DNA from: Macrostomum hystrix
Lineage: Eukaryota > Animalia > Platyhelminthes
Direction: 5' to 3'
NCBI GenBank assembly: GCA_950097015.1
Contig: CATNEN010000002.1
Location: forward strand, 6,200,001 to 6,264,000
DNA: 64,000 nt
This document shows positions 1 through 32,070 of this stretch, one piece after another. Position numbers and translations under genes: made by a program. The stretch's first letter is position 1; every line of letters starts with the position of its first letter. Below the pieces are notes generated by a model. That model made no database searches, was not told where the DNA came from, and saw nothing but the letters and a program-made list of their open reading frames with translations.

Positions 1-7
1 TTTCCAG

Positions 8-3000
8 CATCAATATGACGGACATCCTGCCCAGCCACTCCATCACTGGTGGAGTGTTTTCTCCGCTGACTTTGTTTGAGTCCACCATCACCAATGCCCA
101 GATGCTGGTTGAGTCCATGGCTGAGCGTGAGCTGTTCTCAGCTCTGCGCATCATCGGCAGCCTCCACAGTCACGTGGTACACGTCATGGAGCCCCGCTAC
201 GGCCGGCTGTGCGAGCGAAGCGACCACCTCGCCGAGCTGGAAGCCTCCGGCATGGCCCAGACTGCCGCAGCCGCTGCTGAAGCGGCCGCTTCGTCTGCCA
301 CTGTTAGCGGCGCCAGGCGTGTTGCTAAGGAGGAGAAGATCATGTCCAATTCACCACTGGCTGCTCAGCAGTCTTCTGTGCTCCACTCGGCACTGGGCAC
401 CATAAAGGTTTGTTTGAGCTCACGCTTAGCATCTGAAGCAAATGTACACGTTTTTAGGCCATTTTCAATATTAGATTACTAATTTCTTGAGTAATTTATT
501 AAATAATTAGAGGCTAGGCTAAACTCTTCTCCCCCACAACAACAGATGGAGAACTTTGAGTCGGCGGCGGCAGACTACGGTGAGCAGCACCTGCTGGAGG
601 AGCCACCAACGGAGATCCTTGAAGAAGACGCCGACGATGAGATTGACGACGAAGATGATTGTGTCATCACCGACTATTTCGACGACAGCAGCTTCGGTGG
701 CGGCGGGGTCGGCGGAATTGGAGGCTTCGGCCCGACCCCGTCCAAGATGCCGCGCTACGGCGGCGGTGGCGGAGGTGGCGGCGACAGTTCGATGCCCGCC
801 GAGTGCAAGACCATCATGAGAAGAGCTTACAAGGCGTTGAAAGGGAATGGGCCGCATCTGTTTGACTTTAGCCTGCCGTGAGTTGCACTGAGTTTTAGTT
901 TAACAATTCCTAGAATTCCGGTTAAATTGGGTTTTTCTTAGATTTGAGTGATGGAGTGGGATTTTAAGGACTGTGATGTTTTGGTTTTGAGTAAAGCAGT
1001 AGCATTTAGGTTAAGGAGTTGTTTGTGGGATTTGGGTTAAGGACTGGGATTTTTATGCTAGTGGGATTTCTAGAGAACTTTTATTAATGAGTCTGGGACT
1101 TATTCAGTTTTTAGTGAAATAAGTGTGACTTATTCGGATTTGTGGATAAAGAGTTGGATTTTGGCCACTGGGTTGAGTTGCTATAAATTTTTGGTCATGT
1201 AGTGGAAATTTAAAGGCTATTTGATTGAGAATTCAAGTAATGATTTTTAGGTAAAATTCGAGAACTATATTTAATCTAGAATAATGTAGACTTCTTAACT
1301 TGCTAGTGGACATTTCCATCATGAAGATAGGCATTGCCTAGCGCTTAGAAACAATCTGACTCTGTATTCCCGCTGTGCACCTGCCCCCAGTTTCTCCTCG
1401 GATCAGAACCAACGCGTTGCCGCACGAGTGACCGCAAAGGCCAAGGAGATGGCCCACGGCAAGGGCTGGCCTGAAGACATCTGGCAGAGTGAGTGGGCAG
1501 GTCTTTCCTCTGATATTTCTTTCATTCACCTTGAAAATAAGTTGCATTGACCAGTGTATTATGGGATCTGAGATATTTAAAACAGTCGGACAGACTGTAG
1601 AAATATTAATAGCACACAACGCAGTAGCAGCTTCCAAGAAGGCTGTGTCCTGCTGTCCATGGACTGTAGGGTAGGGATGGTCGCCAATCAAACCTAAATT
1701 TCCCCACCATTTGTTAATGGGCACCAATTTAGTTCCTTGAGAATGATGATTCAAACTACCGACAAAATTATAAGTCTATAATTTAGGAGTGTCGACATTT
1801 TATGTACTACTTAGGAATTTAGTAGTAATTGCTGTATTTGCTATTTTTTTATTATCTATCTGTGTATTTTTGCTTCCATACAAATTTTGTCAAGTCTGGA
1901 AACGTCGCAAGTGAAATGTGGATGTCTGAGATTACAAATCAAATAAAAAAAGCTGATAATTTACAATTCAGCAAATGCTTCACTATGCATTAATTAACTA
2001 ATTAAACTGCATTTTTTTCTTACTGTGGAATGAAATTTTCCCTAAATTTGTATCCCAAGACTTTTTTACTCTGTTTTTAGCACAACAGCCTGCCCCTTGA
2101 ACTGCTGGCGTTTCAGGTAGCGACGTTTCTAGGAAGCTCAGTAAGGATTTGAGTTGATCTAGTCAACAATAGATAAACCAATTGTTCTAGGACTACCCTA
2201 TGGCTCGCGAACTGTCTATGTGTACTTGGATTTCCGGCAGAAGATGCGAATCCGACATCGAGTTGTAGTAAGCCAATAGTGTCCTTAAATGCAGTTTTAT
2301 AGCGGGCGTGAGTCTCCTAGTTGCATTGTTGCATTTCCACACCGATCAATAATGTGCTTGCGATGTTTACCAATTAACACTGTGCTGTAGTTTGTGGTTC
2401 GGCACAATCTGTCATGCCTATTTAACTTAATTCCGCCTAATAATTGATTAATGCTTGAAGGACTGCCCAAAGATGCCAGGGTGAATCGCATTCACTGCAC
2501 CCTGGCTGCTGGCCTCCGCTTCAAGCACAAGCAGATTGTGAGTTTCAAGCTTGCCCAGTTACTATCATTGGCGTTGTGCTTTGATCATTTAAGCAGCAGC
2601 AATGCGTTGAGCACATTCTAATCACTTATTCGACGTTTCCTGAGTATGCCTAAATAGCTTGAAAACCTGAAATCCCAGGAATTCTGAGCATCCTCGCATT
2701 TGCCCACACACCCCTAATCTCCCCCGGAACTGTTTTCTAGAACTGCCAAAAGTTGGCCGACTGTCTGAGATTTTCTTTGTATTCCGAAGCCAGATTCGAA
2801 ACAAGCTGCGGGTGTTTGTAAGCCAAGAATGTCGACTGTGATTTTATTTCTCATTGTTTTGTTTGTTGCCAGCGGCGTTTCTCGACTATTGCGGCCTAGC
2901 TAAGAGTTTTAAAATTCACACGCGTACGAAAATTAACCTGATTGTTTTAGAGTTGCCGGCAAGCGGTCGTGTTGGCAAGATGTTCACCGATTTTAGGCAG

Positions 3001-6000
3001 AAGATGCGCGTCAAACTTCAGTTTAATGTGCGTCTGCTGGGCTGTGCAAACAGCAGCTCTTGTTTTTTCTATAGAAAAGTCTGCGACCGCGTTTCCTGAC
3101 TTGAGTTTGCCTGATAAAATACAGTTCATCACTGGGTTTCAAAACTCAAACCCGCTAAAGCAAGTGCATTTATAATTGTCCATTCTAATGCAGGGCTGCC
3201 ATTTGCGGCTCGTCTGGCGTGCGTGTTCAGCAATTTCCGCCACAAAATGCGAAGCAAATGGCGCGCAGATGTTAGTTCGGTCATTGTTGTTTAGGGCCTG
3301 AATGCGGTGAATTATTTTTGAAAGGCTGACGTTTCCTGACTAGACCATTGTCCTCAGTCATTGTTCTGAACATAATCTTGAGGATTGCAGCAGTTTTGTC
3401 TCTTGGCGCCTCTTACAGACCTGCCATTCAATAGCCGGCTGATTCGCATCTTTGGCGACTTTAAAAAGAAGATTCGTTTCAAATGGCGCTCAACAGTTAG
3501 TCTGGGCTCTTGTTGCCGCATAATTAGTTTCTTCTCTAGTCAATTGAAGCAGGCGTAGGGCGGCTGCGGGCCATTCCGCCAAGCTCTGACTGAGCACACG
3601 TGTGCTCGGATACGCTGAGACGGAGCGGTCAACGCGTCCTACCCTAGCACCCAAGATCTCTATAAAAATATTTTTGACTCTTCGGGGGTTTTGTGCAATT
3701 TACGGCCATAGGCAGTGAAGCCAGCGCCTGAATGCTTTGGGGATGACAGATTGGTTGACAGACTAGTCGAAGGTGTCCTGTGGTTGAGCTGCGCCTAATG
3801 GTTAGGCTTGAACAGTGAAATTGGAGAAATTCGCGTCAGGGTGTCCATGGTGGCCTAGTTCCACCTTTTGTAGCTCTTGAAGGTCTAGATAGATAAGAGA
3901 GATAGATCTAGATAAAGGTCGGTGACCGCCGAAGTCGGAGATGATGCAAGCACATTCGGGTGACATGCTGATAAAGTTTAAAGGTCTGGAAAGGCCGCAC
4001 TGAGGCGCAGTGCAAATTCGTGTATAGGAGTGTATGAAATACACTAGCTCTTATGGGAAAAATCGGACCTTCGGCCAGAAACATTGAATATCTCGACTGT
4101 CTGAAGAGCTGGCGACTTGTTTCTTGTTTCAGAAGATGCGCAACAAAAAGTTGGCCCGTGTTCTCGAGTTTCGTGTGCTTGCATTGTTCCGTATGGGTGC
4201 AGCAAAAAACATTGTCGGTCCTACTTGGTAGTTCTACCGTTAACGGTCCGGAAAAAGAGCCTAGGAATGGTCAAGGAATCGGACTGTGGCAAAAATGTTC
4301 TATGGCACAAAATACCAGTAATATTGCTAATGTGAATTGGGGATGTTGGTCTTTACTGGTATCCATAGCTCAACAAGCCCCAACCCTGATCTCCGTATCT
4401 ACGCAGTTTTAATTGGCCTTCAGCCCACTCTTGACGTCACCCACCTACAATCAATCTGTTGATGGTTGCATATTTATTTATTTTTTTTTATTCACTGCAG
4501 ACGTTTTCCGACCCATTCAAAGAACTATCATTGTCCTAAAAATATGTCTATGGCATCAAAGAATTCACCGTTCATATTTGCAGACCTTCCCACTAATAGC
4601 CGACTGCACAGCATATTTGCCGACTTTAGAAAGAAGATGCGAAACAAGTGGCGCGTTGATGTTTGTTTAAACTCGCTTCTGCTGCAATAGAGCATTTGTT
4701 GGAAAACCAGGAGCATTCAAAGAAACAATTTTACGAATCAGGGCAAAGCTAAAAAATTCATGACCTAGTTCTAAAACAGTGACTGAATAATGGCCAAATT
4801 TTAGTACAGTATGACTAAATCAAGATTCAGTCATAGAGCAGCATGACTGAATCTTGACCAAATCATAGTACTGTATGGCTGAATCATGACAAGATTCTAG
4901 AACATTATGAATAAATCATGACCAATGAATAGAACAGTATGACTGCATTATGACCAAATTCTAGTACACTATGACGAAATCATGACCTAATCATAAAACA
5001 GTATGACTGAATCATGACCAAATCATAGAACAGTATGACTGAATCATGACCAAATCATAGAACAGTATGACTGAATCATGACCAAATCATAGAACAGTAT
5101 GACTGAATCATGACCAAATCATAGAACAGTATGACTGAATCATGACCAAATCATAAAACAGTATGACTGAATCATGACCAAATCATAGAACAGTATGACT
5201 GAATCATGACCAAATCATAGTACTGTATGACTGAATCATGACCAAATCATAGAACAGTATGACTGAATCATGACCAAATCATAGAACAGTATGACTGAAT
5301 CATGACCAAATCATAGTACTGTATGACTGAATCATGACAAGATTCTAGAACATTATGAATAAATCATGACCAATGAATAGAACAGTATGACTGCATTATG
5401 ACCAAATTCTAGTACACTATGACGAAATCATGACCTAATCATAAAACAGTATGACTGAATCATGACCAAATCATAGAACAGTATGACTGAATCATGACCA
5501 AATCATAGAACAGTATGACTGAATCATGACCAAATCATAGAACAGTATGACTGAATCATTAACAAGTCGATGAACAGTTTGTCTGAATTGTGAGCAAATC
5601 CAGGAACATCTAAGAATAGTATCACTGAATCATGACCAAATGAACGAAGATCATGACCGAATCAACAAAGATGATGCCCTGATCCAAGACATCAGATCCC
5701 AGGCTAAACCTGGGAAAAACCCTTGGCTTTTGCCTCATCCCACACCCCGCACGCCGTCAACTCCAGAAGCTGAACCGGCGTCAGAAAAGTTTCGAACTCG
5801 TGGCCACCAGCCTGACCTCTGAGGAGCTGGAGAAATTCCGAGTGATCCTCACCAGAGAGTACACCAGCTCAGATGAGGAGTGCGGCTCCGGCGGCACCGA
5901 CCAGCTCCGGGTGCGCGAACTCGCCTGGGAGTCGGACGAGGTCAAACGGTTGAAGCGGCAGCTGGATCAGGTGTACTCAGACAATTGCGCAACAACCAAG

Positions 6001-6123
6001 CAGAAGCAACAGCTGGCCAGGTGCATCCGGGACCCGATGCGGTCCAGGTCGCAACGGCCGCCGCCTGAACACGCGCCCAGCTGGGCTCTGAAGGTGCCGC
6101 AGCAGAGAGGCCAAACCAGCTGA
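8..6123 (+). CDS. C14orf93-like protein, 5'-partial spliced gene containing a mutually exclusive exon cluster
   Basis: Exons: 8-407 (acceptor tttccag at 1-7, ATG at 15, donor gtttgt), 546-877, 1391-1488, one of seven 77-nt exons (2191-4660), and 5767-6123 (stop TGA). All junctions are GT-AG and phase-compatible (0, 2, 1, 0), giving 418 aa from ATG15. The C-terminal motifs FDFSLPFSSDQNQRV, YTSSDEE, LRVRELAWESDEVKRLKRQLD and RPPPEHAPSWAL match my recollection of the C14orf93-like family (S-D/S-E-E acidic motif followed by a W/R-x-S helix ending LD). The family call is from recall, not from a search. Confidence 0.75.
1889..1915 (+). promoter_or_regulatory. Candidate intronic docking site for mutually exclusive splicing (GTCAAGTCTGGAAACGTCGCAAGTGAA)
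   Basis: Single-copy sequence about 400 nt downstream of the constitutive donor at 1489. Its reverse complement (TTCACTTGCGACGTTTCCAGACTTGAC) recurs in degenerate form upstream of all seven variable exons. Confidence 0.8.
2120..2132 (+). promoter_or_regulatory. Selector A (GCGACGTTTCTAG)
   Basis: Forms 13 contiguous pairs (one G-U) with docking-site CUGGAAACGUCGC (1896-1908); lies 59 nt upstream of exon A. Confidence 0.8.
2191..2267 (+). CDS. Mutually exclusive exon A (77 nt): x-LPYGSRTVYVYLDFRQKMRIRHRVV
   Basis: Acceptor ttctag, donor gtaagc; phase 1 to 0; paralogous to exons B-G. Confidence 0.85.
2356..2368 (+). promoter_or_regulatory. Selector B (GCTTGCGATGTTT)
   Basis: Forms 13 pairs (two G-U) with docking-site AAACGUCGCAAGU; lies 93 nt upstream of exon B. 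Confidence 0.75.
2461..2537 (+). CDS. Mutually exclusive exon B (77 nt): x-LPKDARVNRIHCTLAAGLRFKHKQI
   Basis: Acceptor ttgaag, donor gtgagt; phase 1 to 0. The most divergent member, but it keeps L1, P2, R6, R19 and K21. Confidence 0.8.
2622..2643 (+). promoter_or_regulatory. Selector C (TCACTTattCGACGTTTCCtGA)
   Basis: 10-bp plus 6-bp helices with the docking site; lies 98 nt upstream of exon C. Confidence 0.8.
2741..2817 (+). CDS. Mutually exclusive exon C (77 nt): x-LPKVGRLSEIFFVFRSQIRNKLRVF
   Basis: Acceptor ttttctag, donor gtaagc; phase 1 to 0. Confidence 0.85.
2872..2887 (+). promoter_or_regulatory. Selector D (GCGGCGTTTCTCGACT)
   Basis: 15 of 16 positions pair with docking-site AGUCUGGAAACGUCGC (two G-U); lies 64 nt upstream of exon D. 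Confidence 0.8.
2951..3027 (+). CDS. Mutually exclusive exon D (77 nt): x-LPASGRVGKMFTDFRQKMRVKLQFN
   Basis: Acceptor gttttag, donor gtgcgt; phase 1 to 0. Confidence 0.85.
3082..3104 (+). promoter_or_regulatory. Selector E (TGCGAccgCGTTTCCtGACTTGA)
   Basis: 14 of 15 pairs with docking-site UCAAGUCUGGAAACG plus a 5-bp UGCGA/UCGCA helix; lies 90 nt upstream of exon E. Confidence 0.8.
3194..3270 (+). CDS. Mutually exclusive exon E (77 nt): x-LPFAARLACVFSNFRHKMRSKWRAD
   Basis: Acceptor ctaatgcag, donor gttagt; phase 1 to 0. Confidence 0.85.
3328..3345 (+). promoter_or_regulatory. Selector F (GACGTTTCCtGACTaGAC)
   Basis: 16 of 18 positions complementary to docking site 1889-1906; lies 74 nt upstream of exon F. 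Confidence 0.8.
3419..3495 (+). CDS. Mutually exclusive exon F (77 nt): x-LPFNSRLIRIFGDFKKKIRFKWRST
   Basis: Acceptor tcttacag, donor gttagt; phase 1 to 0. Confidence 0.85.
4491..4512 (+). promoter_or_regulatory. Selector G (TTCACTGCAGACGTTTTCCGAC)
   Basis: Gapped match to the docking-site reverse complement TTCACTTGCGACGTTTCCAGAC; lies 72 nt upstream of exon G. Confidence 0.7.
4584..4660 (+). CDS. Mutually exclusive exon G (77 nt): x-LPTNSRLHSIFADFRKKMRNKWRVD
   Basis: Acceptor atttgcag, donor gtttgt; phase 1 to 0. Confidence 0.85.
4760..5640. repeat. Intronic minisatellite, 32-bp unit (ATGACTGAATCATGACCAAATCATAGAACAGT)
   Basis: Directly visible tandem array in the last intron of the C14orf93-like gene. 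Confidence 0.95.
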
Positions 6124-6887
6124 GTTGACTGCTGTGTTGTTAGCTTATTGAATTGCAATCAGACAGCGTCTAGTGTTATTCGGCTATTTGTAAATTGGTT
6201 TTGCTTTTTACGTTTGCCTACGGCTACCTTATAAATCATAATGCCGATCGTTTTTAATTGCCGAACTCATTTCTGGACTATTTCGACTGCGTACGACTCT
6301 TCTCTTTGACCTGTTCACAATAATTGAGTCTCCACAGTCAAGTGAGGTTTTTCAGCTTATTTTTAAACTAAAGATAAGGCCAGCTAAAGATTATTGGTGA
6401 ATGAACTGCTAAGCAGAGAGCGGAAGTTAACTGCTATAGAGAGTATGTAGAGTGGGTATGAACTACTGTAGAGTGTGTATGAACTACTGTAGAGTATGTA
6501 GAGTGGGTATGAACTACTGTAGAGTGGGTATGAACTGCTTTAGAGTGGGTATGGACTACTGTAGAGTGGGTATGAACTACTGTAGAGTGGGTATGAACTA
6601 CTGTAGAGTGGGTATGAACTACTGTAGAGTGGGTATGAACTACTGTAGAGGGGGTATGAACTGCTGTAGAGTGGGTATGAACTACTGTAGAGGGGGTATG
6701 AACTACTGTAGAGGGGGTATGAACTGCTGTAGAGTGGGTATGAACTACTGTAGAGTGGGTATGAACTACTGTAGAGTGGGTATGAACTACTGTAGAGTGG
6801 GTATGAACTGCTGTAGAGTGGGTATGAACTGCTGTAGAGTGGGTATGAACTGCTGTAGAGTGGGTATGAACTGCTGTAGAGTGGGTA

Positions 6888-7114
6888 TAATAATAATAAT
6901 TGAATAATTGATTACACCTGCCCCAATTGGGTCAAATGTGCAGCCGACAGCACAGCCGCAGCTAATGCGCGGCGCATCTGAAGGCTGCGTACAGCTGTTC
7001 AGTCCATGGACTGGGGGGACGCCACACCCACCTTCAATTATCCCAGCTGATGCTAATACCCATTTAACAGCTGGGTGAACTGAAGCAATGTAGAGTTAAG
7101 TGTCTTGCTAAAAG
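6888..7114 (-). mobile_element. 5'-truncated SINE copy 1
   Basis: Reverse complement of the 3' ~225 nt of the full-length SINE at 23035-23347, including the (ATT)n tail. Confidence 0.9.
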
Positions 7115-7268
7115 AGTGGGTATGAACTACTGTAGAGTGGGTATGAACTACTGTAGAGTGGGTATGAACTACTGTAGAGTGGGTATGAACTGCTGTAGAG
7201 TGGGTATGAACTGCTGTAGAGTGGGTATGAACTGCTGTAGAGTGGGTATGAACTGCTGTAGAGTGGGT

Positions 7269-7496
7269 ATAATAATAATAATTGAATAATTGATTACACC
7301 TGCCCCAATTGGGTCAAATGTGCAGCCGACAGCACAGCCGCAGCTAATGCGCGGCGCATCTGAAGGCTGCGTACAGCTGTTCAGTCCATGGACTGGGGGG
7401 ACGCCACACCCACCTTCAATTATCCCAGCTGATGCTAATACCCATTTAACAGCTGGGTGAACTGAAGCAATGCAGAGTTAAGTGTCTTGCTAAAAG
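7269..7496 (-). mobile_element. 5'-truncated SINE copy 2
   Basis: Near-identical to 6888-7114 with the same truncation point; part of a ~380-bp tandem duplication. Confidence 0.9.
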
Positions 7497-9160
7497 AGTG
7501 GGTATGAACTACTGTAGAGTGGGTATGAACTACTGTAGAGTGGGTATGAACTGCTGTAGAGTGGGTATGAACTACTGTAGAGTGGGTATGAACTACTGTA
7601 GAGTGGGTATGAACTGCTGTAGAGTGGGTATGAACTACTGCAGAGTGGGTATGAAGTACTGTAGAGTGGGTATGAACTACTGTAGAGTGGGTATGAACTG
7701 CTGTAGAGTGGGTATGAAGTACTGTAGAGTGGGTATGAACTACTGTAGAGTGGGTATGAACTGCTGTAGAGTGGGTATGAACTACTGCAGAGTGGGTATG
7801 AAGTACTGTAGAGTGGGTATGAACTGCTGTAGAGGGGTATGAACTACTCTAGAGTGTGTATGAAGTACTGTAGAGTGGGTATATACTACTACACATAGAG
7901 AGTGAACAGTTGAAGAGTAGCAGCAAATTAATCTAGCGGGCTCTGGTCTCCTGGCATCTACTAGCTAAAAGCGTAAATTGTTTTACGAGTATATTGCTCA
8001 GCTTGACGAGGACATACATTTCTTGCTTAATTTGCGTCAGAGTTTTGCATTTTGTCAACTAATTAATAGTTTATTCTCCAGCTATAGGTAATAACTACTC
8101 AGTCATCTCGCTTTATTAACTGTTGTGATTCTTTGCGTTCCATTGGACATAGAAGTGCAAGTATTGTGAAGCAATCGTTTATTTAAGTAATTGTTCATGT
8201 TGGGTTACCGGTTACGCGTTTGAATAAGTTGTGTTACTTAATTTGTCTATAAAAATGAATTTAACAGTAACTTTGAGTTCCAAAATATACTGGAATATAT
8301 TTTGGGTCGGGTCGCATTGTTCATCATCGAAACCGAAACGAAACTTGTAAAAGTATTTTAATCTGAGTTCTCTCTGCTAAAACGATATTGTTGTAGCGAT
8401 ACGCTCGTATCCTGCGTTCCGTGAAAGTCCTGATAGTCAGCATAGCCGACCATCGACTATTTTATCCTTGGTGTGTGGTCTTGCTTGACTCCATGAAATC
8501 CGAAGCGAATTTTATGCAGTTCGCATCAGTCTTAAACTCAAGAACTACTCAAGAATTGTTTTATTCCTTACACGGACGGGTGGGCAGCTAATCGTCTATG
8601 ATAATCTGAGAGATTGTGACAAACTGAACACAAACATTTCAATAAACTGAACACTTTGAAAACGAGTTTTGATAAAATTCTAACAAAAACAATTAAGCTG
8701 AAGTTTTGGAATGCAGAATGCATTTCCTCGAAAATTACTATTTTTTTTACTCGATTCGCTATTTCTGTGAGTTTTTGCTACCAAATACGTTTGTATGACC
8801 GCCATGAGACTATGGCTATGAGCTCTGTCACTATGAGAGCTGCTTCACAGCAGAGCAAACAAATCTGGCTGGCTGGCATGTTTGCCCATCTTCGCAATTA
8901 GGTAAAAATAGAGTCGCATGTTTAAATAAACAAATACTTTTCTTAACCTGCGGCTCAAGCTACTGAGGCAGTCAATGTTGAGTATAATCTTTGTTTAACA
9001 CAATGGGCAAACACACCAGATTTAACGCGTTGTCATGGCAACAGAAAACAAAGGCTATGCAGCACGCTGAGAATGTTTTTAAACTGAAATTTCGAGATTG
9101 ACGGCGGGCCAGGAGAGCTCAGTGTTTCACCCCTGCCTGACCGAGTCTGACTGCTCAGAC

Positions 9161-10292
9161 ATGCCGATCTCATCAGGCGCTGGCGGCAAGCCTAACTCCT
9201 ACTTCAACCCGACCAATGCCGTGTCACGGAGGCCATCCGTCAGCAGCGGCAACTACAGCGGCTCCAGTGCCGGGGCCACTCCCGGCTACTACTATGGCAG
9301 CTACGGCGGCGCCGAGCCCGTTGTCATGGCAACCGTTGCCGGGGCCGCCGCCACACCACGAGGAGTTCAGGTTGGATTTCTTGTCACGATCACGAAAACC
9401 CGGAAACCCTGAAAGTCAGGAAACGCCAGCGACAACTAACACTGACACTCCAGTCTCCATCCCTGACACTCCAGTCTCCATCCCTGACACACCGATCTCC
9501 ATCCCTGACACTCCAATCTCCAACCCTGACACTCCAATCTCCATCCCTGACACACCGATCTCCAACCCTGACACTCCAATCTCCATCCCTGACACTCCAA
9601 TCTCCATCCCTGACACTCCAATCTCCATCCCTGACACTCCAATCTCCATCCCTGACACTCCAATCTCCATCCCTGACACTCCAATCTCCATCCCTGAAAC
9701 TCCAGTCTCTAACCCTGAAACTCCAGTCTCTAACCCTGACACACCTGCAAACTCTCAGGTGGTTGACATATCCGGCCGGATGCCCCAGAACAGCCAAGCC
9801 GCGGTGTCTCGTGAGTCGCCCGACCGTCGCTGCTGTCCGTGTCCGGGCCGCGGCCGCCCGGAGATGCGCATGCCGCCGATGCCGAAGAGCAAGCTGGCCA
9901 CAGCCGGCGGTGCCGTCACCCGCCACGGCTGCTGCGTCTTCCTAATCGGCCTGCTGGCCCTAGCCACGGCTGCCGGCCTCATCGCCGGCCTGTACTTCCT
10001 GTGCACCCAGTTGTCCGGAGTCCGAGCTGCCAGGGGCGCCTTCTACCTGATTCCCGGGAGGCGAGCCGGCGACCTCATGTGGGTCATCTACGGCACCCTG
10101 CAGGAGTGCCAGCCTGTCACCACCAGTGCATCGACCACAAGCACCACAACGTCAACAACCACCACAGTTTCCACCACGAGGGCAACCGGCACTACGGCGT
10201 CGACAACTACGCCGACTACGACTACGACCGCAGCCACAACCTCGGGGACCACATTGATCTCCTGCGCCAGCACCACATATCGGTATCAGCAG
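9161..10292 (+). CDS. Orphan type II single-pass membrane protein with Thr-rich (mucin-like) stalk; 3' end unresolved
   Basis: Exons 9161-9370 (ATG; donor gttgga) and 9759-10292 (acceptor ctctcag; donor gtgagc), phase 0/0. The hydrophobic segment CCVFLIGLLALATAAGLIAGLYFLC is followed by a T-rich run. Confidence 0.65.
9440..9740. repeat. Intronic minisatellite, 21-bp unit (CCCTGACACTCCAATCTCCAT)
   Basis: Fills intron 9371-9758; source of the PISIPDT pseudo-peptide. Confidence 0.95.
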
Positions 10293-11699
10293 GTGAGCAC
10301 AATCACCTTTAAGGGTGCTATCAAAGACCACTTAAGAAGATGATACTATTGGAGACGGAGGGTGAGTGGCAGAGCGGTTAGGGCGTTTGCCTCTCTCACC
10401 AAGGTCCCTGAGAGTCACTCACTCAACAATGAGCCATTGCCCGCAGCCCTGCTGCCATTGTCATTATTACTATTGAAAACTACTCGGGTTCAATTTCTGT
10501 AAGCATAAACTACTTGTTGATCGTGTATGGTAGCTTCGATATTAACGATACATTAAACAGGTTTTATAGATTAAACTGCAATTGTCTATGGTTCCCGAAT
10601 TGAGCGCTAGTTTAAAAAATCTCATTTCCGCCGTTTTTTCCCATAGACTGCGTCTCTCTCCCTTAAGAAGCGTGCAGCCATTTGACCCTCCAGCTCAGTC
10701 TGTCTGCTTCTCAGATATATCTATGGTCTAAGTCTTTGTGTCGTGTACAATCCAAGGGAGTCCTATGAAAGCAACAGACTTCAACTCGGTGGTGATTAGT
10801 TTTTAGCTCTTATTCTGTAGAGTTAGCATCACATTTAACACACTTGCAACTGACACCTTTGAGTTTTTTGTACTTTGCACCCTTCAACTTGTAACCCACC
10901 GGTCGCAGGTGACATTGTCAGTCGGCAGGACTCGGCCGGAACCGATCTTCGTAGCAGCCTCCGCGGCGGCTGCCCTACTCTGCCGGCTGCTGTTGATGAC
11001 GCAACAGGTCACGTGATGTGCTAGAGTTAAAACAACGCATTAATTTTATTGCATACATCCATTCTTTATTTTCGTAAGTTATTTACTATATTAATCTTAT
11101 TTCTAATTTTAATTTATAATGTTTTACAGAAACATTTTTGTTATAAATATAATGGACGGGTATAATTAGAAATTATATGTTTAAATAATAAAAATTTAAT
11201 GGCTAACGAAATGATAATCTCTATAACTCTTAATATTTCTTTAAACCAATTTATTTTTTTGTCGTTTAAAAGTACTAAAAAGTTTTCTTTAGTGCCATCT
11301 ATACGTAGTAGACCCTTGTACCTAGACGCAAGCCAATTGCTAGTTTCTGTTAGCTTAGAAACTGTTTCTTTGCTCTGTAAACTTCGTCTTATTGTTATAA
11401 TTTTTAAGACAAGTAAAATTATTTTGCTGTGTAAAAAACTGTACAGTTACTGTCGTCGTTTAGCGGTAGTTGACAATACTATTTTTCGATTTCAATGATG
11501 ACGTAGCTGCGTTGTCTTAAAAGCATGCTTTTTTAAGTCTCGCTTAAGGTTTCTACCTGTCTGCCACTAAATAAATAAGAACAATGCGTCTTTAACTTGT
11601 GTTGTATTTGCAGTGTAACTTCTTTATCAAACCAGAGCTCAAAGGCCCGCCTTAAGAAATCAAAAACTTGCATAGCTGCCCAAACACTGCCTAAACACT

Positions 11700-12296
11700 G
11701 ACTAATATCTGTCAAATCACTGCCTAATTACTGCCTAATCACTCTGTAATCATTTTCTAATCACTGGCTAATCACTGGCTAATCACAGGCTAATCACTGG
11801 CTAATCACTGGCTTATCACTGGCTAATCACTGGCTAATCACTCTGTAATCATTTTCTAATCACTCTGTAATCATTTTCTAATCACTCTGTAATCATTTTC
11901 TAATCACTCTGTAATCATTTTCTAATCACTCTGTAATCATTTTCTAATCACTCTGTAATCATTTTCTAATCACTCTGTAATCATTTTCTAATCACTCTGT
12001 AATCATTTTCTAATCACTCTGTAATCATTTTCTAATCACTCTGTAATCATTTTCTAATCACTCTGTAATCATTTTCTAATCACTCTGTAATCATTTTCTA
12101 ATCACTCTGTAATCATTTTCTAATCACTCTGTAATCATTTTCTAATCACTCCGTAATCATTTTCTAATCACTCTGTAATCATTTTCTAATCACTGGCTAA
12201 TCACTGGCTAATCACTGGCTAATCACTGGCTAATCACTGGCTAATCACTGGCTAATCACTGGCTAATCACTGGCTAATCACCGGCTAATCACAGCC
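11700..12296. repeat. Minisatellite, 22-bp unit (AATCACTCTGTAATCATTTTCT) flanked by the related 11-mer TAATCACTGGC
   Basis: Directly visible tandem array. Confidence 0.95.
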
Positions 12297-14283: not shown

Positions 14284-15331
14284 ATGAGCTTATCAGCTTC
14301 ACCGCTGAGCATCAACTGTGCGCTGCTCACGCTGCTGGCAATTGTTGTTGCAGCTGATGGCCAGCAGGTGTTGAACTCTATGCAGCACAAGTTCCAGCTG
14401 GCGCACAAGTCCAGCAGCCGGCTGCCGATCAGCTTCGCGACAGATGCCGGGCCAGCAGCCGGCAGCCGGATACGATGCTCGGCCCGCTGCGGAGCCCTGC
14501 CCAGCTGCTTCGGCTTCTTCAGACGGGTCGACTTCGGCTGCGGCTACTTCTTCGGCTGCGACTATTTCAACGAGGAAGCGTGGAACTCCAGCGACACCGA
14601 CTGGGACATCTTTGTACGGCCAGTTGGTGAGCGGCAGTGTGCAATTCAAGACAGTCAAGCTATTGACGTTGAGCGTCGGACTGACAACTTGCAAGTCGGG
14701 GGTTCGATTCCCGTCCACGCTGGAACAGTTTGTGTCCTTTGGCAAGAAACTCATTAAATCTGCACAGTAGAGCTAATTCTCTTGCTAAAGTACACAATTA
14801 TTTCAGTGGAGTCGAGAATCGAACTCACGACCTTTAAGTCGCGAGTCCAACGCTCTTACCACACTAGGCTACAACCGCTCTCATCTGTTTGTTTTAACCA
14901 AACCAACTCCAGCCGCAAAAGTGACTAAACTACCCGCCATCGACTGCAAACAGAGCAGCACCCGCAAGACCGACGGCTGCTGGAAGGCAATCGACGGTGA
15001 CATCAGGCAGAACCTCCTCACGGGCCAGTCCTGCACCCACACCATGTACAACACTGGCGAATGGTGGGAGGCTGAATTAGCTAGCGCTGCCATCGTGGCC
15101 TCCGTGACTCTGTACAACCGGCTCGACTGCTGCAGGCAGCGCCTGAGCAACTTCAGCCTGCTGGTGGACGGCGTACAGTGCCTCCGCGTGGATCTGGGCA
15201 GCGACAGCTTCTCTGTGCGCACCTTCAGCTGCTACGGCTGGGGCAGGCGGGTCAGAGTGCTCAGCATGCTGGTTGACGAACCGCTGCACATCTGCGAGTT
15301 CTTCGCCTACGCCCAGCTGCCTGATGCCTGA
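14284..15331 (+). CDS. Secreted F-type lectin (FTP/fucolectin domain) with N-terminal Cys-containing PAN/apple-like region
   Basis: Exons 14284-14626 and 14913-15331 (phase 1, GT-AG). Signal peptide present. FTP motifs QSST..AIDG..CTHT..WW..NRLDCCRQRLSNF, with exact H-x26-R-x-D-x4-R spacing. Confidence 0.85.
14629..14750 (+). mobile_element. SINE 5' fragment (tRNA-like head plus start of core domain)
   Basis: B box GGTTCGATTCC followed by TTTGTGTCCTTTGGCAAGA, similar to 23035-23140. Confidence 0.7.
14775..14880 (-). mobile_element. SINE 5' fragment, inverted relative to the preceding one
   Basis: Reverse complement reads GAGCGGTTGTAGCCTAGTGTGGTAAGAGCGTTGGACTCGCGACTTAAAGGTCGTGAGTTCGATTCTCGACTCCACTG, homologous to the SINE head at 23035. 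Confidence 0.8.
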
Positions 15332-15659: not shown

Positions 15660-16670
15660 ACAGTCAGTCTGTCAGGCTGAGAGTCAGGGTTGGAGTCAGT
15701 CAGTCAGGGTGAGAGTCAGTCAGTCAGGGTAAGAGTCCGTTAGTCAGGGTGAGAGTCAGTCAGGGAAAGAGTCCGTCAGTCAGGGTGAGAGCCAGTCAGT
15801 CTGGGTGAGAGTCAGTCAGTCAGGGTGAGAGTCAGTCTGTCTGGGTGATAGTTAGTCAGTCAGGGTGAGAGTCAGTCTGTCTGGGTGAGAGTCAGTCTGT
15901 CTGGGTGAGAGTCAGTCTGTCTGGGTGATAGTTAGTCAGTCAGGGTGAGAGTCAGTCTGTCTGGGTGAGAGTCAGTCTGTCTGGGTGAGAGTCAGGGCGA
16001 GAGTCTGTCAGTCAGAGTGAGAGTCAGTCAGTCTGGGTGAGAGTCAGTCAGGGTGAGAGTCCGTCAGTCAGGGTAAGAGTCCGTCAGTCAGGGTGAAAGT
16101 CAGTCTGTCAGAGTGAGAGTCAGTCAGTCTGGGTGAGAGTCAGTCAGGGTGAGAGTCCGTCAGTCAGGGTAAGAGTCCGTCAGTCAGGGTGAAAGTCAGT
16201 CTGTCTGGGTGAGAGTCAGTCTGTCTGGGTGAGAGTCAGTCAGGGTGAGAGTCAATCAGTCAGGGTAAGAGTCCGTCAGGCAGGGTGAAAGTCAGGGTGA
16301 GAGTCAGTCAGGGTGAGAGTCCGTCAGTCAGGGTGAGAATCCGTCAGTCAGGGTGAGAGTCCGACAGTCAGGGTGAGAGTCCGTCAGTCAGGGTGAGAGT
16401 CCGTCAGTCAGGGCGAGAGTCAGTCAGTCAGGGTGAGAGTCCGTCAGTCAGGGTGAGAGTCAGTCAGGGTGAGAGTCCGTTAGTCAGGGTGAGAGTCCGT
16501 CAGTCAGGGTGAGAGTCCGTCAGTCAGGGCGAGAGTCAGTCAGTCAGGGTGAGAGTCCGTCAGTCAGGGTGAGAGTCAGTCAGGGTGAGAGTCCGTCAGT
16601 CAGGGTGAGAGTCCGTCAGTCAGGGTGAGAGTCCGTCAGTCAGGGTGAGAGTCCGTCATTCAGGGTGACT
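15660..16670. repeat. Minisatellite, ~20-bp unit (GTCAGTCAGGGTGAGAGTCC) with 16-bp variants
   Basis: Directly visible tandem array. Confidence 0.95.
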
Positions 16671-17549
16671 AAGGGTCCCTAAGTTAGCAAAAGCTGTCTC
16701 ACAGCTTCAACAAAATGTTTTTAAAGACATAACAATGCCCAACTGTGTAAACTGGGTTGTAGCATTAGTATTCTTGGCAATTTCATATAAAACTTTACAA
16801 TCAAAGCCATCTTGAGGCGAGAAAAATAGTATCTATTTACATTTGCATGCACAGAAAGTACATTTCGCAGGTAAAAGTACAAAAAAGAATTATCAGTCAA
16901 ACAAGTGTCAATTAAAACTTTGATGGCGCCTAAGAAATAATACAAATAACACTTTAAAAAAATAGACAAGCACCACCCGATATGTATTGATATTGTTTTA
17001 GGAGAAAAGTTGTTACACACCCTTGCCAATGTTATGCGGGATAATATTGAGCTTGCATTAGCCTGTCCGTTGGCTAGAGGAAAAATAAAAGTACATGCAA
17101 AAAGCCAAGCTCGCCAGATAGTCCGTGATAGGTCAAATTGTTGAAGGTGAATTATGGGTAACGGGTGAGAGTTGAAGTCGCTGCTAGTGCTGCATGTGTC
17201 AAGAATGAGTAAAATCAATTAGCAAAGAAGCGATACTTGCTAAATACTGTCACTTCATTTTTTACTGATATATTGATTGATTGATTGACAGGTCGCAATA
17301 AAATAGAATACAAAAGTTGTCGGAAAATAGGCACCTGAAATAGGCAACAGATTGACAAAAACTTAATATAATTTTATAATATAAAAATGCTTAACAAAAA
17401 GTAAAAAACTTGAAATGATGCCTTACAGACGCTTGAACAAACATTGACAAATTGACATAAAAATAATGATAAAATAGTACAGATGTATACAGGAACACGT
17501 AAGCATACAAAATTGTGTTCTCACAGCTTCATGAGTTAAGTCTAGGGTG

Positions 17550-18308: not shown

Positions 18309-21300
18309 CTAAAGCGCAGTGGTCAAAATGTCTGGCGAGTTAAATTCGTTGGCGATGTCTGGCGAATTCTCTGCTGGTTCTGTCGCCGTCGACGTCGCCG
18401 AAGGGGGCGCAGTCGAAATCGGCGTCGGCGAGGGCGACGACTCGGGATTAGGCCGGTGGTGATGGCGGTGATGATGAGCATGATGTTGATGGGCATGGCG
18501 ATGATTCCGCGACGGCGACAAACGACGCGAAGCTGACGGCGCGCCGTTCTCCCGCGCAGCCGTCGAGCAGTCGCTAAGCGACAAGGCCGAAGCTGATGGC
18601 AGGTCGACGCCGAAGTCGCAGCAGTCCGAATCGTCGGTAATGGACGAGCAGGAGGACGAAGAGGAGGCGGCCGGGCCAACGGCGAAACCGCGGAATTGAT
18701 CGTCGAGTTGACCGTTGTCGACCGTGTCGGGGTAGGCAAAGTTGACGGTAATCTGCGATGGATTGGCGAGGCCGAATGAGAAATGGGAAATGGGGAAATG
18801 GGATCTGGAATAGAGATAAAACAGCTGAGCAGGTGGCACGAACCGCAAATGCCTCGGGATAAACCCGGTGCTGCTTGTCCTTGAAAGCCTTGTCTAGCTC
18901 GCATTTCGTCAGCGTTAGCGATAGTTCGCGGTCAGATTTCGACCTCGTTGAGAAGCCAGCCGCTTCGGTTGAGTCGGCGCGGTTTCGGCGCCACAGAGCG
19001 CCCGGCGTGTCAGGCGGCTGGTTGACTATGAAGAAGGTGTTCAGCCAGCAGTGGAACACCTTGTCCAGGCGGGACAGCAGCTTGCTGCGATTGTAGAACA
19101 CCAGCTTGAAGTCGCCGCTAACAGCAATCGGAGCGGGCGGCCGGATTACAAAAGTGCCGGGTGGCTGGGCAAGGCCGCGGCGTGGCTCAACGCTCTCGGA
19201 TTCGCCGACTGTCTTCAGCGTGCTCTTGTTGTCCTGCGCACAGGCGGGAGGGATCAGGAACAGGTGGTTGGAGATGTCAGGAACAGGTGGTTGGAGATGT
19301 CAGGAACAGGTGGTTGGAGATGTCAGGAACAGGTGGTTGGAGATGTCAGGAACAGGTGGTTGGAGATGTCAGGAACAGGTGGTTGGAGATGTCAGGAACA
19401 GGTGGTTGGAGATGTCAGGAATAGGTAGTTTAAGAAGTCATGAACAGGTGGTTGGAGTTGGAGTGAATATGAGATCAGGAACCAGGTGAGGATAGGAACA
19501 GGTGGGGATCAGGAACGAGGATCAGGAACAGGTGGGGATTAGGAACATTTGGGGATCAGGAACAGGTTGGGATCAGGCACAGTTGGGGATCAGGAACAGG
19601 TTGGGATCAGGCACAGTTGGGGATCAGAAACAGGTTGGGATCAGGCACAGTTGGGGATCAGGAACAGGTGGGGATTAGGCACAGTTAGGGATCAGGAACA
19701 GGTGGGGATTAGGCACAGTTGGGGATCAGGAACAGGTGGGGATTAGGCACAGTTGGGGATCAGGAACAGGTGGGGATTAGGCACTGGTGGGGATTAGGCA
19801 GAGTTGGGGATCAGGAACAGGTGTGTGAGTCTCACCTGGCCGCAGTCACGCACCATTTTCATGCACTTGAACATGAGACAGCAGCTGCCTGACTGAAAAG
19901 CTGGCGGGCCGCCTTCGACAACAATGGAGGTGAGCAGCAGGTTGAAGTTCTCCAAAGCCAGCTGTTTGTGCAGCATGTGAGCATAGTAGAAAACGTAGCG
20001 TCTCTGAGACGGGATGGTGACCCCCTGCAACGCGATGGGAATTTTTTATTCAGGGAAAGGGACATCTAAACCAAGGACCTCACCCATCACTCTCCACCCA
20101 CCTTGTTATCGTGCGTGCGCTTCGTATCGTAGAGTCTCAGCACGTCGCTGGCAGTCAGGAAAGTCGGCGGCTGGCCGTGCAATCCATGGAAGCTCTCGAA
20201 CAGCAGGTAGCAACAGACCATAGCACCTGTGCGACCCTGCGACATGGAGCAGAAAACACAGTTTCTGAAGTTTTCATCCAATAATAATCGTGACTGGGAT
20301 AAATAGAGACTCACTTTTCCAGCCTTGCAGTGGATGGCCGCCACATAGTCCGGACCTTTCTGCAGCCAGCGGTACACAGACATGCAGAAATACGGAATGA
20401 TGTGAATGGGCGGCGGGTTGTGATCTCGCATTGGAAACTGCTCAACCCGGTCGCGAAATTTTGATACATCGTAGGCTCGCTCAACGCAGCTGGGATAGAG
20501 TTAAATTAATAGCTTTTTAGTGAAACTTTACCATCATTTTCCCTTACAGCCCCTCCTCTCTCCAACAATGTTCTGTTCCTCACACCCACTGCACTTTCCC
20601 TCTCCCCCACTGCCCTAACTTTCCCTCTCCCCCACTGCCCTAACTTTCCCTCTCCCCCACTGCCCTAACTTTCCCTATCCCCCCACTGCCCTAACTTTCC
20701 CTCTCCCCCACTGCCCTAACTTTCCCTCTCCCCCACTGCCCTAACTTTCCCTCTCCCCCACTGCCCTAACTTTCCCTCTCCCCCACTGCCCTAACTTTCC
20801 CTCCCCCCCACTGCCCTAACTTTCCCTCTCCCCCACTGCCCTAACTTTCCCTCTCCCCCCCTGCCCTAACTTTCCCTCTCCCCCACTGCCCTAACTTTCC
20901 CTCTCCCCCACTGCCCTAACTTTCCCTCTCCCCCACTGCCCTAACTTTCCCTCTCCCCCACTGCCCTAACTATCCCTCTCCCCCACTGCCCTAACTTTCC
21001 CTCTCCCCACTGCCCTAACTTTCCCTCTCCCCCACTGCCCTAACTATCCCTCTCCCCCACTGCCCTAACTTTCCCTCTCCCCACTGCCCTAACTTTCCCT
21101 CTCCCCCACTGCCCTAACTTTCCCTCTCCCTCACTGCCCTAGCTATCCCTCTCCCCCACTGCCCTAACTTTCCCTATCCCCCCACTGCCCTAACTTTCCT
21201 TCCCCCCCCACTGCCCTAACTTTCCCTCTCCCCCCCTGCCCTAACTTTCCCTCTCCCCCACTGCCCTAACTTTCCCTCTCCCCCACTGCCCTAACTTTCC

Positions 21301-31770: not shown

Positions 31771-32070
31771 GATACAGTGCTGTATGAGCAGCGCATCTGT
31801 CCCTGCACTGGATCTCTGGAACTCATTGGGCTATGCAGTTTGTTAAAGGGAATCTATTTACGCATGATATTTTCGTCCCATCTTATTGGCAGCTCATTGC
31901 CATAGACAATTTTTTTTTAGAAATACTTAAATGTCAAAACCAAGTAAAGAAGATAAATTCACAGATTCTATATTACGGTAATATAGAATCTGTGGCTAAA
32001 TTAGCTAAAGCGACTTTTTGTTGTAATTTTCATCAGTAAAGAAAGAAAGGAAAGCATTTTTGCCGTGAAC

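What the first reader, a model, noticed from the sequence alone, without database searches (positions are those of the whole stretch)
2191..4660. Seven tandem 77-nt mutually exclusive exons in a C14orf93-like gene
Seen in sequence: seven exons (2191-2267, 2461-2537, 2741-2817, 2951-3027, 3194-3270, 3419-3495, 4584-4660). Each is exactly 77 nt, bounded by AG/GT, enters in phase 1 and leaves in phase 0, matching the upstream constitutive donor (1488, phase 1) and downstream acceptor (5767, phase 0). They encode aligned 25-aa peptides with invariant L1, P2, R6 and R19, hydrophobic positions 10/14/18 and K/R21, while their DNA and the introns have diverged strongly. Because 77 is not a multiple of 3, two exons frameshift the message (A+B hits TGA at 2482), and skipping all truncates the protein near 5820. 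Only one-at-a-time inclusion rebuilds the 418-aa ORF. The spacers are 133-1088 nt, too long for steric exclusion. Established knowledge: duplicated mutually exclusive exon arrays are typified by arthropod Dscam1 and Mhc. Inference: a 7-way cassette in this gene family in a non-arthropod is, to my knowledge, undescribed. Gene predictors would probably annotate only one exon.
Basis: partly seen in the sequence, partly recalled or inferred. Interest (0 to 1): 0.95.

Follow-up and report, generated by a model that had tools for sequence, protein, structure and literature searches.

The report
Flatworm seven-exon mutually exclusive cassette
A Macrostomum flatworm gene of unknown function carries seven interchangeable 77-base exons plus the same kind of "docking site and selector" RNA-pairing signals that let insect Dscam1 pick one exon at a time, apparently an independent invention of that trick outside arthropods.

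Summary
There are seven homologous 77-nt exons with AG/GT borders at the stated coordinates. Any single exon gives a 418-aa ORF; none, two or three never do.

The window is from a Macrostomum-type flatworm. The M. lignano orthologue has the same seven exons in the same order. Across these pairs dN/dS is 0.18 at dS about 1.2, while the introns no longer align. Two M. lignano paralogues carry 5 and at least 11 such exons. More distant paralogues have one.

A 17-nt core (window 1896-1912), in the intron after the upstream constitutive exon, is identical in all four loci. A complementary selector lies 48-90 nt upstream of each of the seven exons (-23 to -27 kcal/mol). Selectors pair better with their own locus's docking flanks in 23 of 27 cases.

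This is a Dscam1-exon-6-type architecture. I found no paper describing it in flatworms.

RNA evidence is indirect. RNA-seq-based M. lignano annotation shows one paralogue transcript with exactly one variable exon and one transcript with none.

The "C14orf93-like" label is not supported: there is no Pfam hit. The protein family is uncharacterised and found almost only in Macrostomum.

The scan's two other notes on this feature cover this same stretch, not other DNA.

The parts
15..407 (+). Coding exon 1 (ATG at 15), phase 0 at its end
   Evidence: ORF model. The N-terminus is near-identical to the RNA-based M. lignano protein P0159.
546..877 (+). Coding exon 2
   Evidence: The GTIK|MENF and FDFSLP|FSS junctions match P0159.
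1391..1488 (+). Upstream constitutive exon; donor GTGAGT; leaves 1 base (phase 1)
   Evidence: 87% amino-acid identity to L007 7561-7653.
1886..1916 (+). Docking site. The invariant 17-nt core CTGGAAACGTCGCAAGT is at 1896-1912, 408 nt downstream of the donor.
   Evidence: The core is identical in the window, L007, L001 and L008, in introns that otherwise do not align. It is complementary to all seven selectors.
2110..2142 (+). Selector 1 (pairs with docking site, -26.4 kcal/mol), 48 nt upstream of v1
2191..2267 (+). Variable exon v1 (77 nt)
   Evidence: Orthologue is L007 8182; 20/25 amino acids identical.
2355..2373 (+). Selector 2 (-23.3 kcal/mol)
   Evidence: A 13-nt block identical in L007 is the best conserved block of that intron.
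2461..2537 (+). Variable exon v2
   Evidence: Orthologue is L007 8413; 18/25 amino acids identical.
2621..2650 (+). Selector 3 (-25.2 kcal/mol)
2741..2817 (+). Variable exon v3
   Evidence: Orthologue is L007 9822; 23/25 amino acids identical.
2865..2895 (+). Selector 4 (-25.4 kcal/mol)
2951..3027 (+). Variable exon v4
   Evidence: Orthologue is L007 10108; 16/25 amino acids identical.
3081..3105 (+). Selector 5 (-27.4 kcal/mol, 19 bp, no G-U)
   Evidence: rank 1 in the 64 kb scan.
3194..3270 (+). Variable exon v5
   Evidence: Orthologue is L007 10312; 11/25 amino acids identical.
3324..3346 (+). Selector 6 (-26.5 kcal/mol)
   Evidence: rank 2.
3419..3495 (+). Variable exon v6
   Evidence: Orthologue is L007 10528; 17/25 amino acids identical.
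4490..4522 (+). Selector 7 (-25.9 kcal/mol)
4584..4660 (+). Variable exon v7
   Evidence: Orthologue is L007 11002; 19/25 amino acids identical.
5767..6123 (+). Downstream constitutive exon (phase 0), encoding the conserved C-terminal domain and the stop codon
   Evidence: 91% amino-acid identity to L007 11664-12008. 111 relatives at E<=1e-3.

Best explanation
This is a true cluster of seven mutually exclusive exons in a Macrostomum-specific gene of unknown function.

Proposed mechanism: the pre-mRNA has one docking sequence (1886-1916) in the intron after exon 1391-1488. Each variable exon has, 48-90 nt upstream, a selector complementary to that same docking sequence. All seven selectors use the same 17-nt docking core, so only one can pair at a time. 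Pairing loops out the exons in between and brings one variable exon next to the upstream donor, so that exon is spliced in. This is the mechanism proposed for Dscam1 exon 6.

A second safeguard is the exon length. 77 is not a multiple of 3, so including two or three exons shifts the frame into early stop codons.

Each chosen exon encodes the first ~22 residues of a long, strongly basic helix (net charge +5 to +7). A conserved hydrophobic/arginine face is kept. A stripe of positions roughly every fourth residue differs between exons. The isoforms therefore probably differ in what that helix surface binds.

Shown: exon anatomy, frame logic, one-to-one orthologous conservation under purifying selection, complementarity, conservation and co-variation of the docking and selector sequences.

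Inferred: one-at-a-time inclusion in this species, that pairing drives the choice, and the function of the helix.
For: Exon anatomy and frame logic.

Orthologue: M. lignano locus L007 has exactly seven collinear 77-nt AG/GT exons.
- Pooled dN/dS is 0.18 at dS 1.21, and pN is below pS in every pair.
- The introns are unalignable at about 33% identity.

Copy number and intactness:
- Paralogous loci carry 5 exons (L001/L005/L006) and at least 11 exons (L008).
- All 30 exons compared across the four loci have no in-frame stop.
- More distant paralogues have a single exon at this position.

Docking and selectors:
- In a scan of the whole 64 kb, the seven selectors rank 1, 2, 3, 4, 6, 14 and 21 of about 12,800 windows.
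- With the 31-nt docking region, all seven give -23.3 to -27.4 kcal/mol. Random 140-nt segments average -15.1, and only 3.3% reach -22.
- In five of the eight cluster introns (those before v2, v3, v4, v6 and v7), the best block shared with the orthologue contains the selector.
- The 17-nt core is identical in all four loci, at 78-438 nt from the donor.
- Selectors bind their own locus's docking site better than another paralogue's in 23 of 27 cases (-26.0 vs -23.6 kcal/mol, Wilcoxon p=7e-5).

RNA-based M. lignano annotation (StringTie/TACO, PMC5730564):
- P0002/P0142 contain exactly one variable exon.
- P0143 joins the upstream exon directly to the downstream exon.
- All five exons are intact at that P0143 locus.

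Helix:
- AlphaFold2 model of P0141.
- Variable positions recur with a period of about 4 residues.
Against: - No transcript data exist for the window's own species. No Logan or other transcript-derived protein matched.
- In M. lignano only one variable exon per locus is seen in models. The transcript models of the direct orthologue and of the >=11-exon locus stop in the intron after the upstream exon (P0159, P0158), so use of all seven exons is inferred from selection, not seen.
- Selectors within a locus share ancestry, so the statistics on them are not from independent samples.
- The first exons of L001 and L007 have weak selectors, and none was found for the last two exons of L008.
- Many selectors carry a U-U mismatch in the middle of the duplex.
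- Pairing has not been tested by mutation.
Confidence: 0.8

Rival explanations
1. Duplicated exons are mostly dead. One or two exons are used constitutively, and the rest are decaying tandem duplicates that still look like exons.
For: Only one variable exon per locus appears in RNA-based or evidence-based models (P0002, P0141). v5 is the least conserved orthologous pair (11/25 amino acids, pN 0.36). A possible decayed relic lies at 4105-4148 (E 1.8).
Against: - All seven exons keep their exact length, AG/GT borders, an open frame and a selector in two lineages separated by dS of about 1.2, where the introns are randomised. pN is below pS in each pair.
- 30 of 30 exons in four loci have no stop.
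- The TACO setting isoform-frac 0.75 used for the annotation removes minor isoforms.
Confidence: 0.07
2. The exons are mutually exclusive, but RNA pairing does not choose between them. The conserved intronic motifs are binding sites for a splicing protein or leftovers of the duplicated unit. Exclusivity would come from frame/NMD surveillance and other regulators.
For: - The selector consensus (GACGTTTCCTGAC) is better conserved than perfect complementarity would need.
- It carries a recurrent central mismatch to the docking site.
- No experiment has tested pairing.
- For Dscam1 exons 4 and 9, long-range pairing itself has been disputed (PMC7430681).
Against: - The docking element occurs once per locus, in reverse-complement orientation to the selectors.
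- It lies at very different distances from the donor (78-438 nt) but keeps an identical 17-nt core.
- The docking flanks differ between paralogues and the selectors follow them (23/27, p=7e-5).
Confidence: 0.1
3. The cluster is mainly an on/off switch. The default product skips all variable exons and is a truncated 292-aa protein. Inclusion of any exon merely turns on the full-length protein, and exon identity matters little.
For: P0143 (PAA59491.1) is an RNA-based model that joins the upstream exon to the downstream exon out of frame, at a locus with all five exons intact. In the window the skip-all stop (5820) lies in the last coding exon, so it may escape NMD (my inference).
Against: - Exon-specific sequences are conserved one-to-one between orthologues. 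For example, v3 is 23/25 identical, while v3 versus the other exons is 7-13/25.
- The cluster has expanded to at least 11 exons in a paralogue. Both points argue that exon identity is under selection.
- A switch role could coexist with diversification.
Confidence: 0.03

Closest known systems
Dscam1 exon 6 cluster of insects and crustaceans (Graveley 2005 model; described in PMC6071210 and PMC11802352)
   Same: - A single docking site lies in the intron just after the upstream constitutive exon.
- There is one complementary selector upstream of every variable exon.
- All selectors compete for the same docking nucleotides.
- The exons are tandem duplicates of equal length.
- The docking site is the most conserved intronic element.
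   Different: - The phylum differs (Platyhelminthes) and the gene is unrelated: no Ig or FN3 domains, no Pfam family.
- There are 5, 7 or at least 11 exons rather than 48.
- The exons are 77 nt, so multiple inclusion also breaks the frame.
- The variable part is a basic helix, not an Ig half-domain.
- No hrp36-like repressor, locus control region or balancer pairings are known here.
- No experimental proof exists here.
Other docking/selector MXE genes: 14-3-3 zeta, Mhc, MRP1, Dscam1 exons 4 and 9 (insects); DNM1, ATE1 (mammals) (PMC6071210, PMC11802352, PMC7797038)
   Same: Competing intronic RNA pairings linked to the choice among tandem-duplicated exons.
   Different: PMC6071210 states that the insect genes (14-3-3 zeta, Mhc, MRP1, other Dscam clusters) have the docking site downstream of the cluster; I did not check this for DNM1 or ATE1. 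ATE1 has two exons, and most annotated MXE clusters are pairs. Here the docking site is upstream and the cluster is large.
Known flatworm MXEs: Mhc cluster-8 pair (PMC3912159), coq-2 pair (PMC7434440)
   Same: Tandem-duplicated exons of equal length and frame in Platyhelminthes genes.
   Different: Those are two-exon clusters. The passages I read of PMC3912159 mention no competing RNA structure; PMC7434440 was seen only as a search hit. This one has 7 exons (5 to at least 11 in paralogues) and explicit docking and selector elements.
Model in which tandem duplication itself creates competing RNA structures (Ivanov and Pervouchine 2018, PMC6071210)
   Same: Each duplicated unit here carries both the exon and its upstream selector, as that model predicts. 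Copy number differs between paralogues (5, 7, at least 11).
   Different: That model was built on fly and human data. This would be an independent natural example in a third lineage.

Membership tests
Tandem-duplicated mutually exclusive exon cluster (prediction criteria as in Kassiopeia, PMC3923563) | Neighbouring exons of similar length, homologous sequence, same reading frame and conserved splice sites | tested here: met
   There are seven exons, all 77 nt, AG/GT bounded, phase 1 to phase 0. They are homologous at E 4e-15 to 3e-9.
Tandem-duplicated mutually exclusive exon cluster | Exactly one exon of the cluster in each mature mRNA | not testable with these tools
   No transcripts of this species are available. 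In an M. lignano paralogue, RNA-based models contain exactly one exon (P0002/P0142) or none (P0143). The frame allows only one.
Tandem-duplicated mutually exclusive exon cluster | Each alternative exon is kept functional by selection | tested here: met
   All seven have one-to-one orthologues in M. lignano. Pooled dN/dS is 0.18 at dS 1.21, beside unalignable introns.
Docking site / selector competing RNA structures (Dscam1 exon 6 type) | A single docking site in the intron next to the flanking constitutive exon | tested here: met
   The core at 1896-1912 occurs once in the window. One copy per locus is found in L007, L001 and L008.
Docking site / selector competing RNA structures (Dscam1 exon 6 type) | One selector per variable exon, complementary to the docking site | tested here: met
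   Window: 7 of 7, 16-24 bp, -23.3 to -27.4 kcal/mol, ending 48-90 nt upstream of each exon. Other loci: L007 7 of 7 (the first weak), L001 4 of 5, L008 9 of 11.
Docking site / selector competing RNA structures (Dscam1 exon 6 type) | Selectors overlap on the docking site, so only one can pair at a time | tested here: met
   Every predicted duplex covers docking positions of about 1897-1909.
Docking site / selector competing RNA structures (Dscam1 exon 6 type) | Evolutionary conservation and co-variation of the pairing | tested here: met
   The 17-nt core is invariant in four loci. Selectors fall within the best conserved block in five of the eight cluster introns. Own-locus pairing is stronger than cross-locus pairing in 23 of 27 cases, p=7e-5. 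Caveat: selectors within a locus are not independent samples.
Docking site / selector competing RNA structures (Dscam1 exon 6 type) | Disrupting the pairing changes exon choice, and compensatory mutation restores it | not testable with these tools
   Needs minigenes or transgenic worms.
C14orf93 / RTFC family (Pfam DUF4616, by my own knowledge) | Significant match to the family profile | tested here: not met
   No Pfam family reaches its cut-off for the window's exon translations or for the M. lignano relatives scanned. Five family members were also scanned at E<=10. The nearest non-Macrostomum relative is an unnamed hemichordate protein at E 1e-5.

The most novel reading that the evidence does not exclude
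A Dscam1-exon-6-type docking/selector system arose independently in flatworms, in an unrelated gene family expanded in Macrostomum. It is still expanding: 5, 7 and at least 11 exons in three paralogues, and 1 exon in older paralogues. It would diversify one exposed stripe of a basic helix. That would make it a second natural system of RNA-pairing-driven choice among many exons, possibly for a diversified recognition function. It would be testable in M. lignano, an animal with working transgenesis.
Probability: 0.6. Interest if true: 0.78.

Novelty: new member of a known kind. Interest (0 to 1): 0.68.

Why it matters
Large mutually exclusive exon clusters run by a single upstream docking site and one selector per exon are known essentially from pancrustacean Dscam1 exon 6. 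Other documented docking/selector cases are mostly exon pairs, and in the insect genes the docking site lies downstream of the cluster (PMC6071210).

An independent example in a flatworm would matter for four reasons:
- It would show that this architecture is a recurrent evolutionary solution, not a Dscam peculiarity.
- It offers snapshots of growth (1, 5, 7 and at least 11 exons in paralogues) to test the idea that duplication itself creates the competing structures.
- It gives a compact cluster (2.5 kb here) in a genus where M. lignano can be made transgenic (PMC5730564), so docking and selector mutations and their compensation could be tested in vivo.
- It flags a systematic annotation error. 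Current M. lignano models of these genes are truncated, skip the cluster, or chain exons wrongly.

Tried and rejected
- Pfam scans of exon translations and of full-length relatives: nothing, so no family name and no support for C14orf93.
- AlphaFold2 model of P0141 (pLDDT 72), searched with Foldseek against PDB: no match at E<=1e-3.
- VIA-align wide search: best Z 4.8, within noise. Several rows at Z 3.7-4.5 were N-terminal core-binding domains of tyrosine recombinases. I treat this as a lead only.
- Looked for transcript-derived proteins of this species or other Macrostomum: only M. lignano entries were found.
- Global MAFFT alignment of the window against the L007 cluster: it mis-registered because of large indels and gave about 33% intron identity. 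I replaced it with intron-by-intron local alignment.
- Local alignment of the first introns of the window and L001: not significant overall (score 24; shuffles reach 30), apart from the exact 17-mer.
- Eighth exon: the stretch 4105-4148 resembles the 3' half of an exon but scores only E 1.8 and has a stop just upstream, so I did not count it.
- A 'skip' selector before the downstream exon: the best duplex is -20 kcal/mol and lies inside a tandem repeat, so not convincing.
- Steric hindrance and U2/U12 incompatibility as the cause of exclusivity: rejected. Spacers are 133-1088 nt and all borders are GT-AG.
- Rfam at gathering thresholds: only a borderline tRNA elsewhere in the window.


Full report
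**Observation**

Reading 1-7000 and scripted checks confirm every structural claim.
- The seven exons (2191-2267, 2461-2537, 2741-2817, 2951-3027, 3194-3270, 3419-3495, 4584-4660) are each 77 nt, preceded by AG and followed by GT.
- The gene model is 15-407, 546-877, 1391-1488 (leaving one base), one variable exon, then 5767-6123. Each of the seven choices gives a 418-aa ORF.
- Skipping all exons stops at residue 292 (TGA at 5820). None of the 21 pairs or 35 triples stays open. v1+v2 stops at 2482.
- A profile HMM of the exons finds exactly these seven copies in the 64 kb (E 4e-15 to 3e-9). The next hit has E 0.17.
- The peptides share L1, P2, R6 and R19, hydrophobic positions 10/14/18 and K/R at 21.

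**Organism and gene family**

- The downstream exon has 111 relatives at E<=1e-3 among 1.84 billion representative proteins.
- All close relatives are unnamed Macrostomum lignano proteins.
- Locus L001 comes from GCA_002269645.1 (NIVC01...). PMC5730564 identifies this as the M. lignano Mlig_3_7 assembly.
- No M. lignano protein is identical to the window's. The best orthologue is about 87-91% identical in the flanking exons, and dS is about 0.6-1.2. The window is therefore from another Macrostomum-type flatworm. Other notes of this scan say the same.
- No piece of the protein and no relative hits any Pfam family. The label 'C14orf93-like' is not supported.
- The only named non-Macrostomum relative is an uncharacterised hemichordate protein at E 1e-5.
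- An AlphaFold2 model of the relative P0141 (pLDDT 72) has no convincing structural match.

**Comparative evidence that all seven exons are real**

- P0159 is an RNA-based M. lignano model whose N-terminus is almost identical to the window's protein. It led to locus L007.
- L007 has exactly seven 77-nt AG/GT exons in the same order, each clearly the counterpart of v1-v7. Identity is 11-23 of 25 residues; v3 is 23/25.
- Pooled over the seven pairs, dS is 1.21, dN is 0.22 and dN/dS is 0.18, with pN below pS in every pair. The flanking constitutive exons give dN/dS 0.07.
- The introns are essentially unalignable, at about 33% identity.
- Within the window the seven exons are old copies: pS is about 0.75 (near saturation) and pN is 0.45.
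- Two paralogous M. lignano loci have the same design with other copy numbers. There are five exons in L001 and its near-identical copies L005 and L006, and at least eleven good exons in L008, which runs off the fetched DNA.
- All 30 exons compared across the four loci are 77 nt, AG/GT bounded, free of stops and net +4 to +7 in charge.
- More distant paralogues (P0004, P0011, P0145, P0020) have one exon at this position and no detectable duplicates. The array therefore arose within this subfamily.

**Docking site and selectors**

- A motif like GACGTTTCC lies upstream of every variable exon. Its reverse complement occurs once, at 1894-1908, in the intron after exon 1391-1488.
- I scanned the whole window with a 24-nt docking probe. 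The seven selectors rank 1, 2, 3, 4, 6, 14 and 21 among about 12,800 windows.
- With the 31-nt region 1886-1916, all seven form 16-24 bp duplexes of -23.3 to -27.4 kcal/mol, ending 48-90 nt before their exon.
- Random 140-nt segments of the window average -15.1 kcal/mol, and only 3.3% reach -22.
- The 17-nt core CTGGAAACGTCGCAAGT is identical in the window, L007, L001 and L008. It lies 408, 230, 78 and 438 nt from the donor, in introns that do not otherwise align.
- In five of the eight cluster introns (those before v2, v3, v4, v6 and v7), the best block shared between the window and L007 contains the selector.
- The docking flanks differ between paralogues, and the selectors follow them. 23 of 27 selectors bind their own locus's docking site better than those of the other paralogue groups (-26.0 vs -23.6 kcal/mol, Wilcoxon p=7e-5).
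- An earlier two-locus version of this test gave 8 of 11, p=0.007.
- Caveats: selectors within a locus are related by descent. A few exons (the first of L001 and L007, the last two of L008) lack a good selector in the searched interval.

**RNA evidence**

- None is available for the window's species.
- The Mlig_3_7 annotation is built from RNA-seq with StringTie/TACO at isoform-frac 0.75, which removes minor isoforms.
- At the five-exon locus, it gives models with exactly one variable exon (P0002, P0142).
- It also gives one model that joins the upstream exon directly to the downstream exon out of frame (P0143), on a copy where all five exons are intact.
- At the seven-exon and at-least-eleven-exon loci, the models end by running into the intron after the upstream exon (P0159, P0158). 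That is what one expects when coverage splits among many alternatives, but it proves nothing.
- UniProt models from the older assembly either use one exon (P0141) or chain several with frame errors (P0001, P0003, P0112, P0160, P0161).

**Mechanism proposed**

- One docking site and competing selectors would allow only one pairing per pre-mRNA. That pairing would bring one variable exon next to the upstream donor, as proposed for Dscam1 exon 6 (PMC6071210, PMC11802352).
- The 77-nt length adds a frame and nonsense safeguard against double inclusion.
- Steric and U2/U12 explanations are excluded by the spacer lengths and the GT-AG borders.

**The variable segment in the protein**

- In the model of P0141, the variable exon is residues 184-209. 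It forms the first part of a long helix (188-224) that continues into the constitutive KLxRRQK segment.
- Across the 30 exons, positions 1, 2, 6, 10, 11, 14, 19, 21 and 23 are conserved. Positions 3, 4, 8, 9, 12, 16, 20, 24 and 25 are the most variable, with a period near 4 residues.
- This fits one conserved packing/basic face and one diversified face. What that face binds is unknown.

**Comparison with what is known**

- The architecture matches Dscam1 exon 6. PMC6071210 singles that cluster out as the case with the docking site upstream of the cluster.
- That paper says the other insect docking/selector genes (14-3-3 zeta, Mhc, MRP1, other Dscam clusters) place the docking site downstream, and that most annotated MXE clusters are pairs; PMC11802352 also lists long-range pairings for the mammalian genes DNM1 and ATE1.
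- In flatworms I found only two-exon cases: Mhc cluster-8 (PMC3912159) and coq-2 (PMC7434440).
- Searches for Macrostomum or flatworms together with mutually exclusive or competing-RNA terms returned nothing relevant.
- I file this as a new member of a known kind, not a new mechanism.

**Verdict**

- Observation: confirmed.
- Interpretation: largely right, and strengthened by orthology and by the docking/selector system. It is wrong on the gene-family name, and still lacks direct RNA proof in this species.

Noticed in passing
window 4780-5600; L007 11250-11607; L001 about 16540-16990: The last intron of the cluster, between the last variable exon and the downstream exon, holds a tandem-repeat array in all three loci examined.
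- Window: 32 nt x 26 copies. L007: 34 nt x 11 copies. L001: a roughly 22-nt unit.
- The window and its orthologue share the 10-mer TATGACTGAA 15 and 10 times, and it occurs nowhere else in either sequence.
- The L001 unit contains GACTGAG.
- This may be a splicing-regulatory array, or just one of the tandem repeats that are very common in this genome.
   Followed up: partly
window 4105-4165: A stretch resembles the 3' half of a variable exon (..QKMRNKK..). It has indels and an upstream in-frame stop, and the nhmmer E-value is only 1.8. It may be a decayed eighth copy inside the 1088-nt intron.
   Followed up: partly
L008 8884-13982 (M. lignano NIVC01001722.1): A paralogous locus carries at least eleven good 77-nt exons, plus one doubtful first copy, after the same docking core. 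The fetched DNA ends before the downstream exon, so the real number may be higher.
   Followed up: partly
L001 1206-7757; L007 3906-4265; L008 3867-4238: In M. lignano, each multi-exon-cluster gene is preceded a few kb upstream by a tandem paralogue of the same family. For the L001 paralogue (P0145) I checked that it has a single exon at the variable position. In the window that neighbour would lie before position 1.
   Followed up: partly
model of P0141, residues 205-320 (corresponds to window exon 5767-6123): Seven of the 50 best VIA-align rows for the C-terminal domain are N-terminal core-binding (DNA-binding) domains of tyrosine recombinases: lambda Int, XerD and several structural-genomics integrase fragments. 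They score Z 3.7-4.5, rmsd 3.2-3.8 Å, over 71-83 residues. This is below any safe threshold and is only a lead to a possible nucleic-acid-binding fold.
   Followed up: no
window 6497-7890, 9442-9742, 11685-12000, 27348-31826: Dense tandem-repeat arrays. They include a 21-nt satellite of about 66 copies just after the gene, and a repeat block of about 4.5 kb with extreme GC and AT skew that reads as a 1492-aa ORF on the minus strand.
   Followed up: no
window 14921-15328 (+) and 20090-20431 (-): One exon-sized ORF carries an F5/8 type C (NedA-like galactose-binding) domain at E 8e-11. Another carries a dual-specificity/PTEN-like phosphatase P-loop (HCKAGK...GRTG), with Pfam PTP-SAK at E 4e-5, below its cut-off. 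These are neighbouring genes and were not studied.
   Followed up: no
window 23037-23106 (+): Borderline tRNA match in Rfam (29.4 bits against a gathering score of 29).
   Followed up: no
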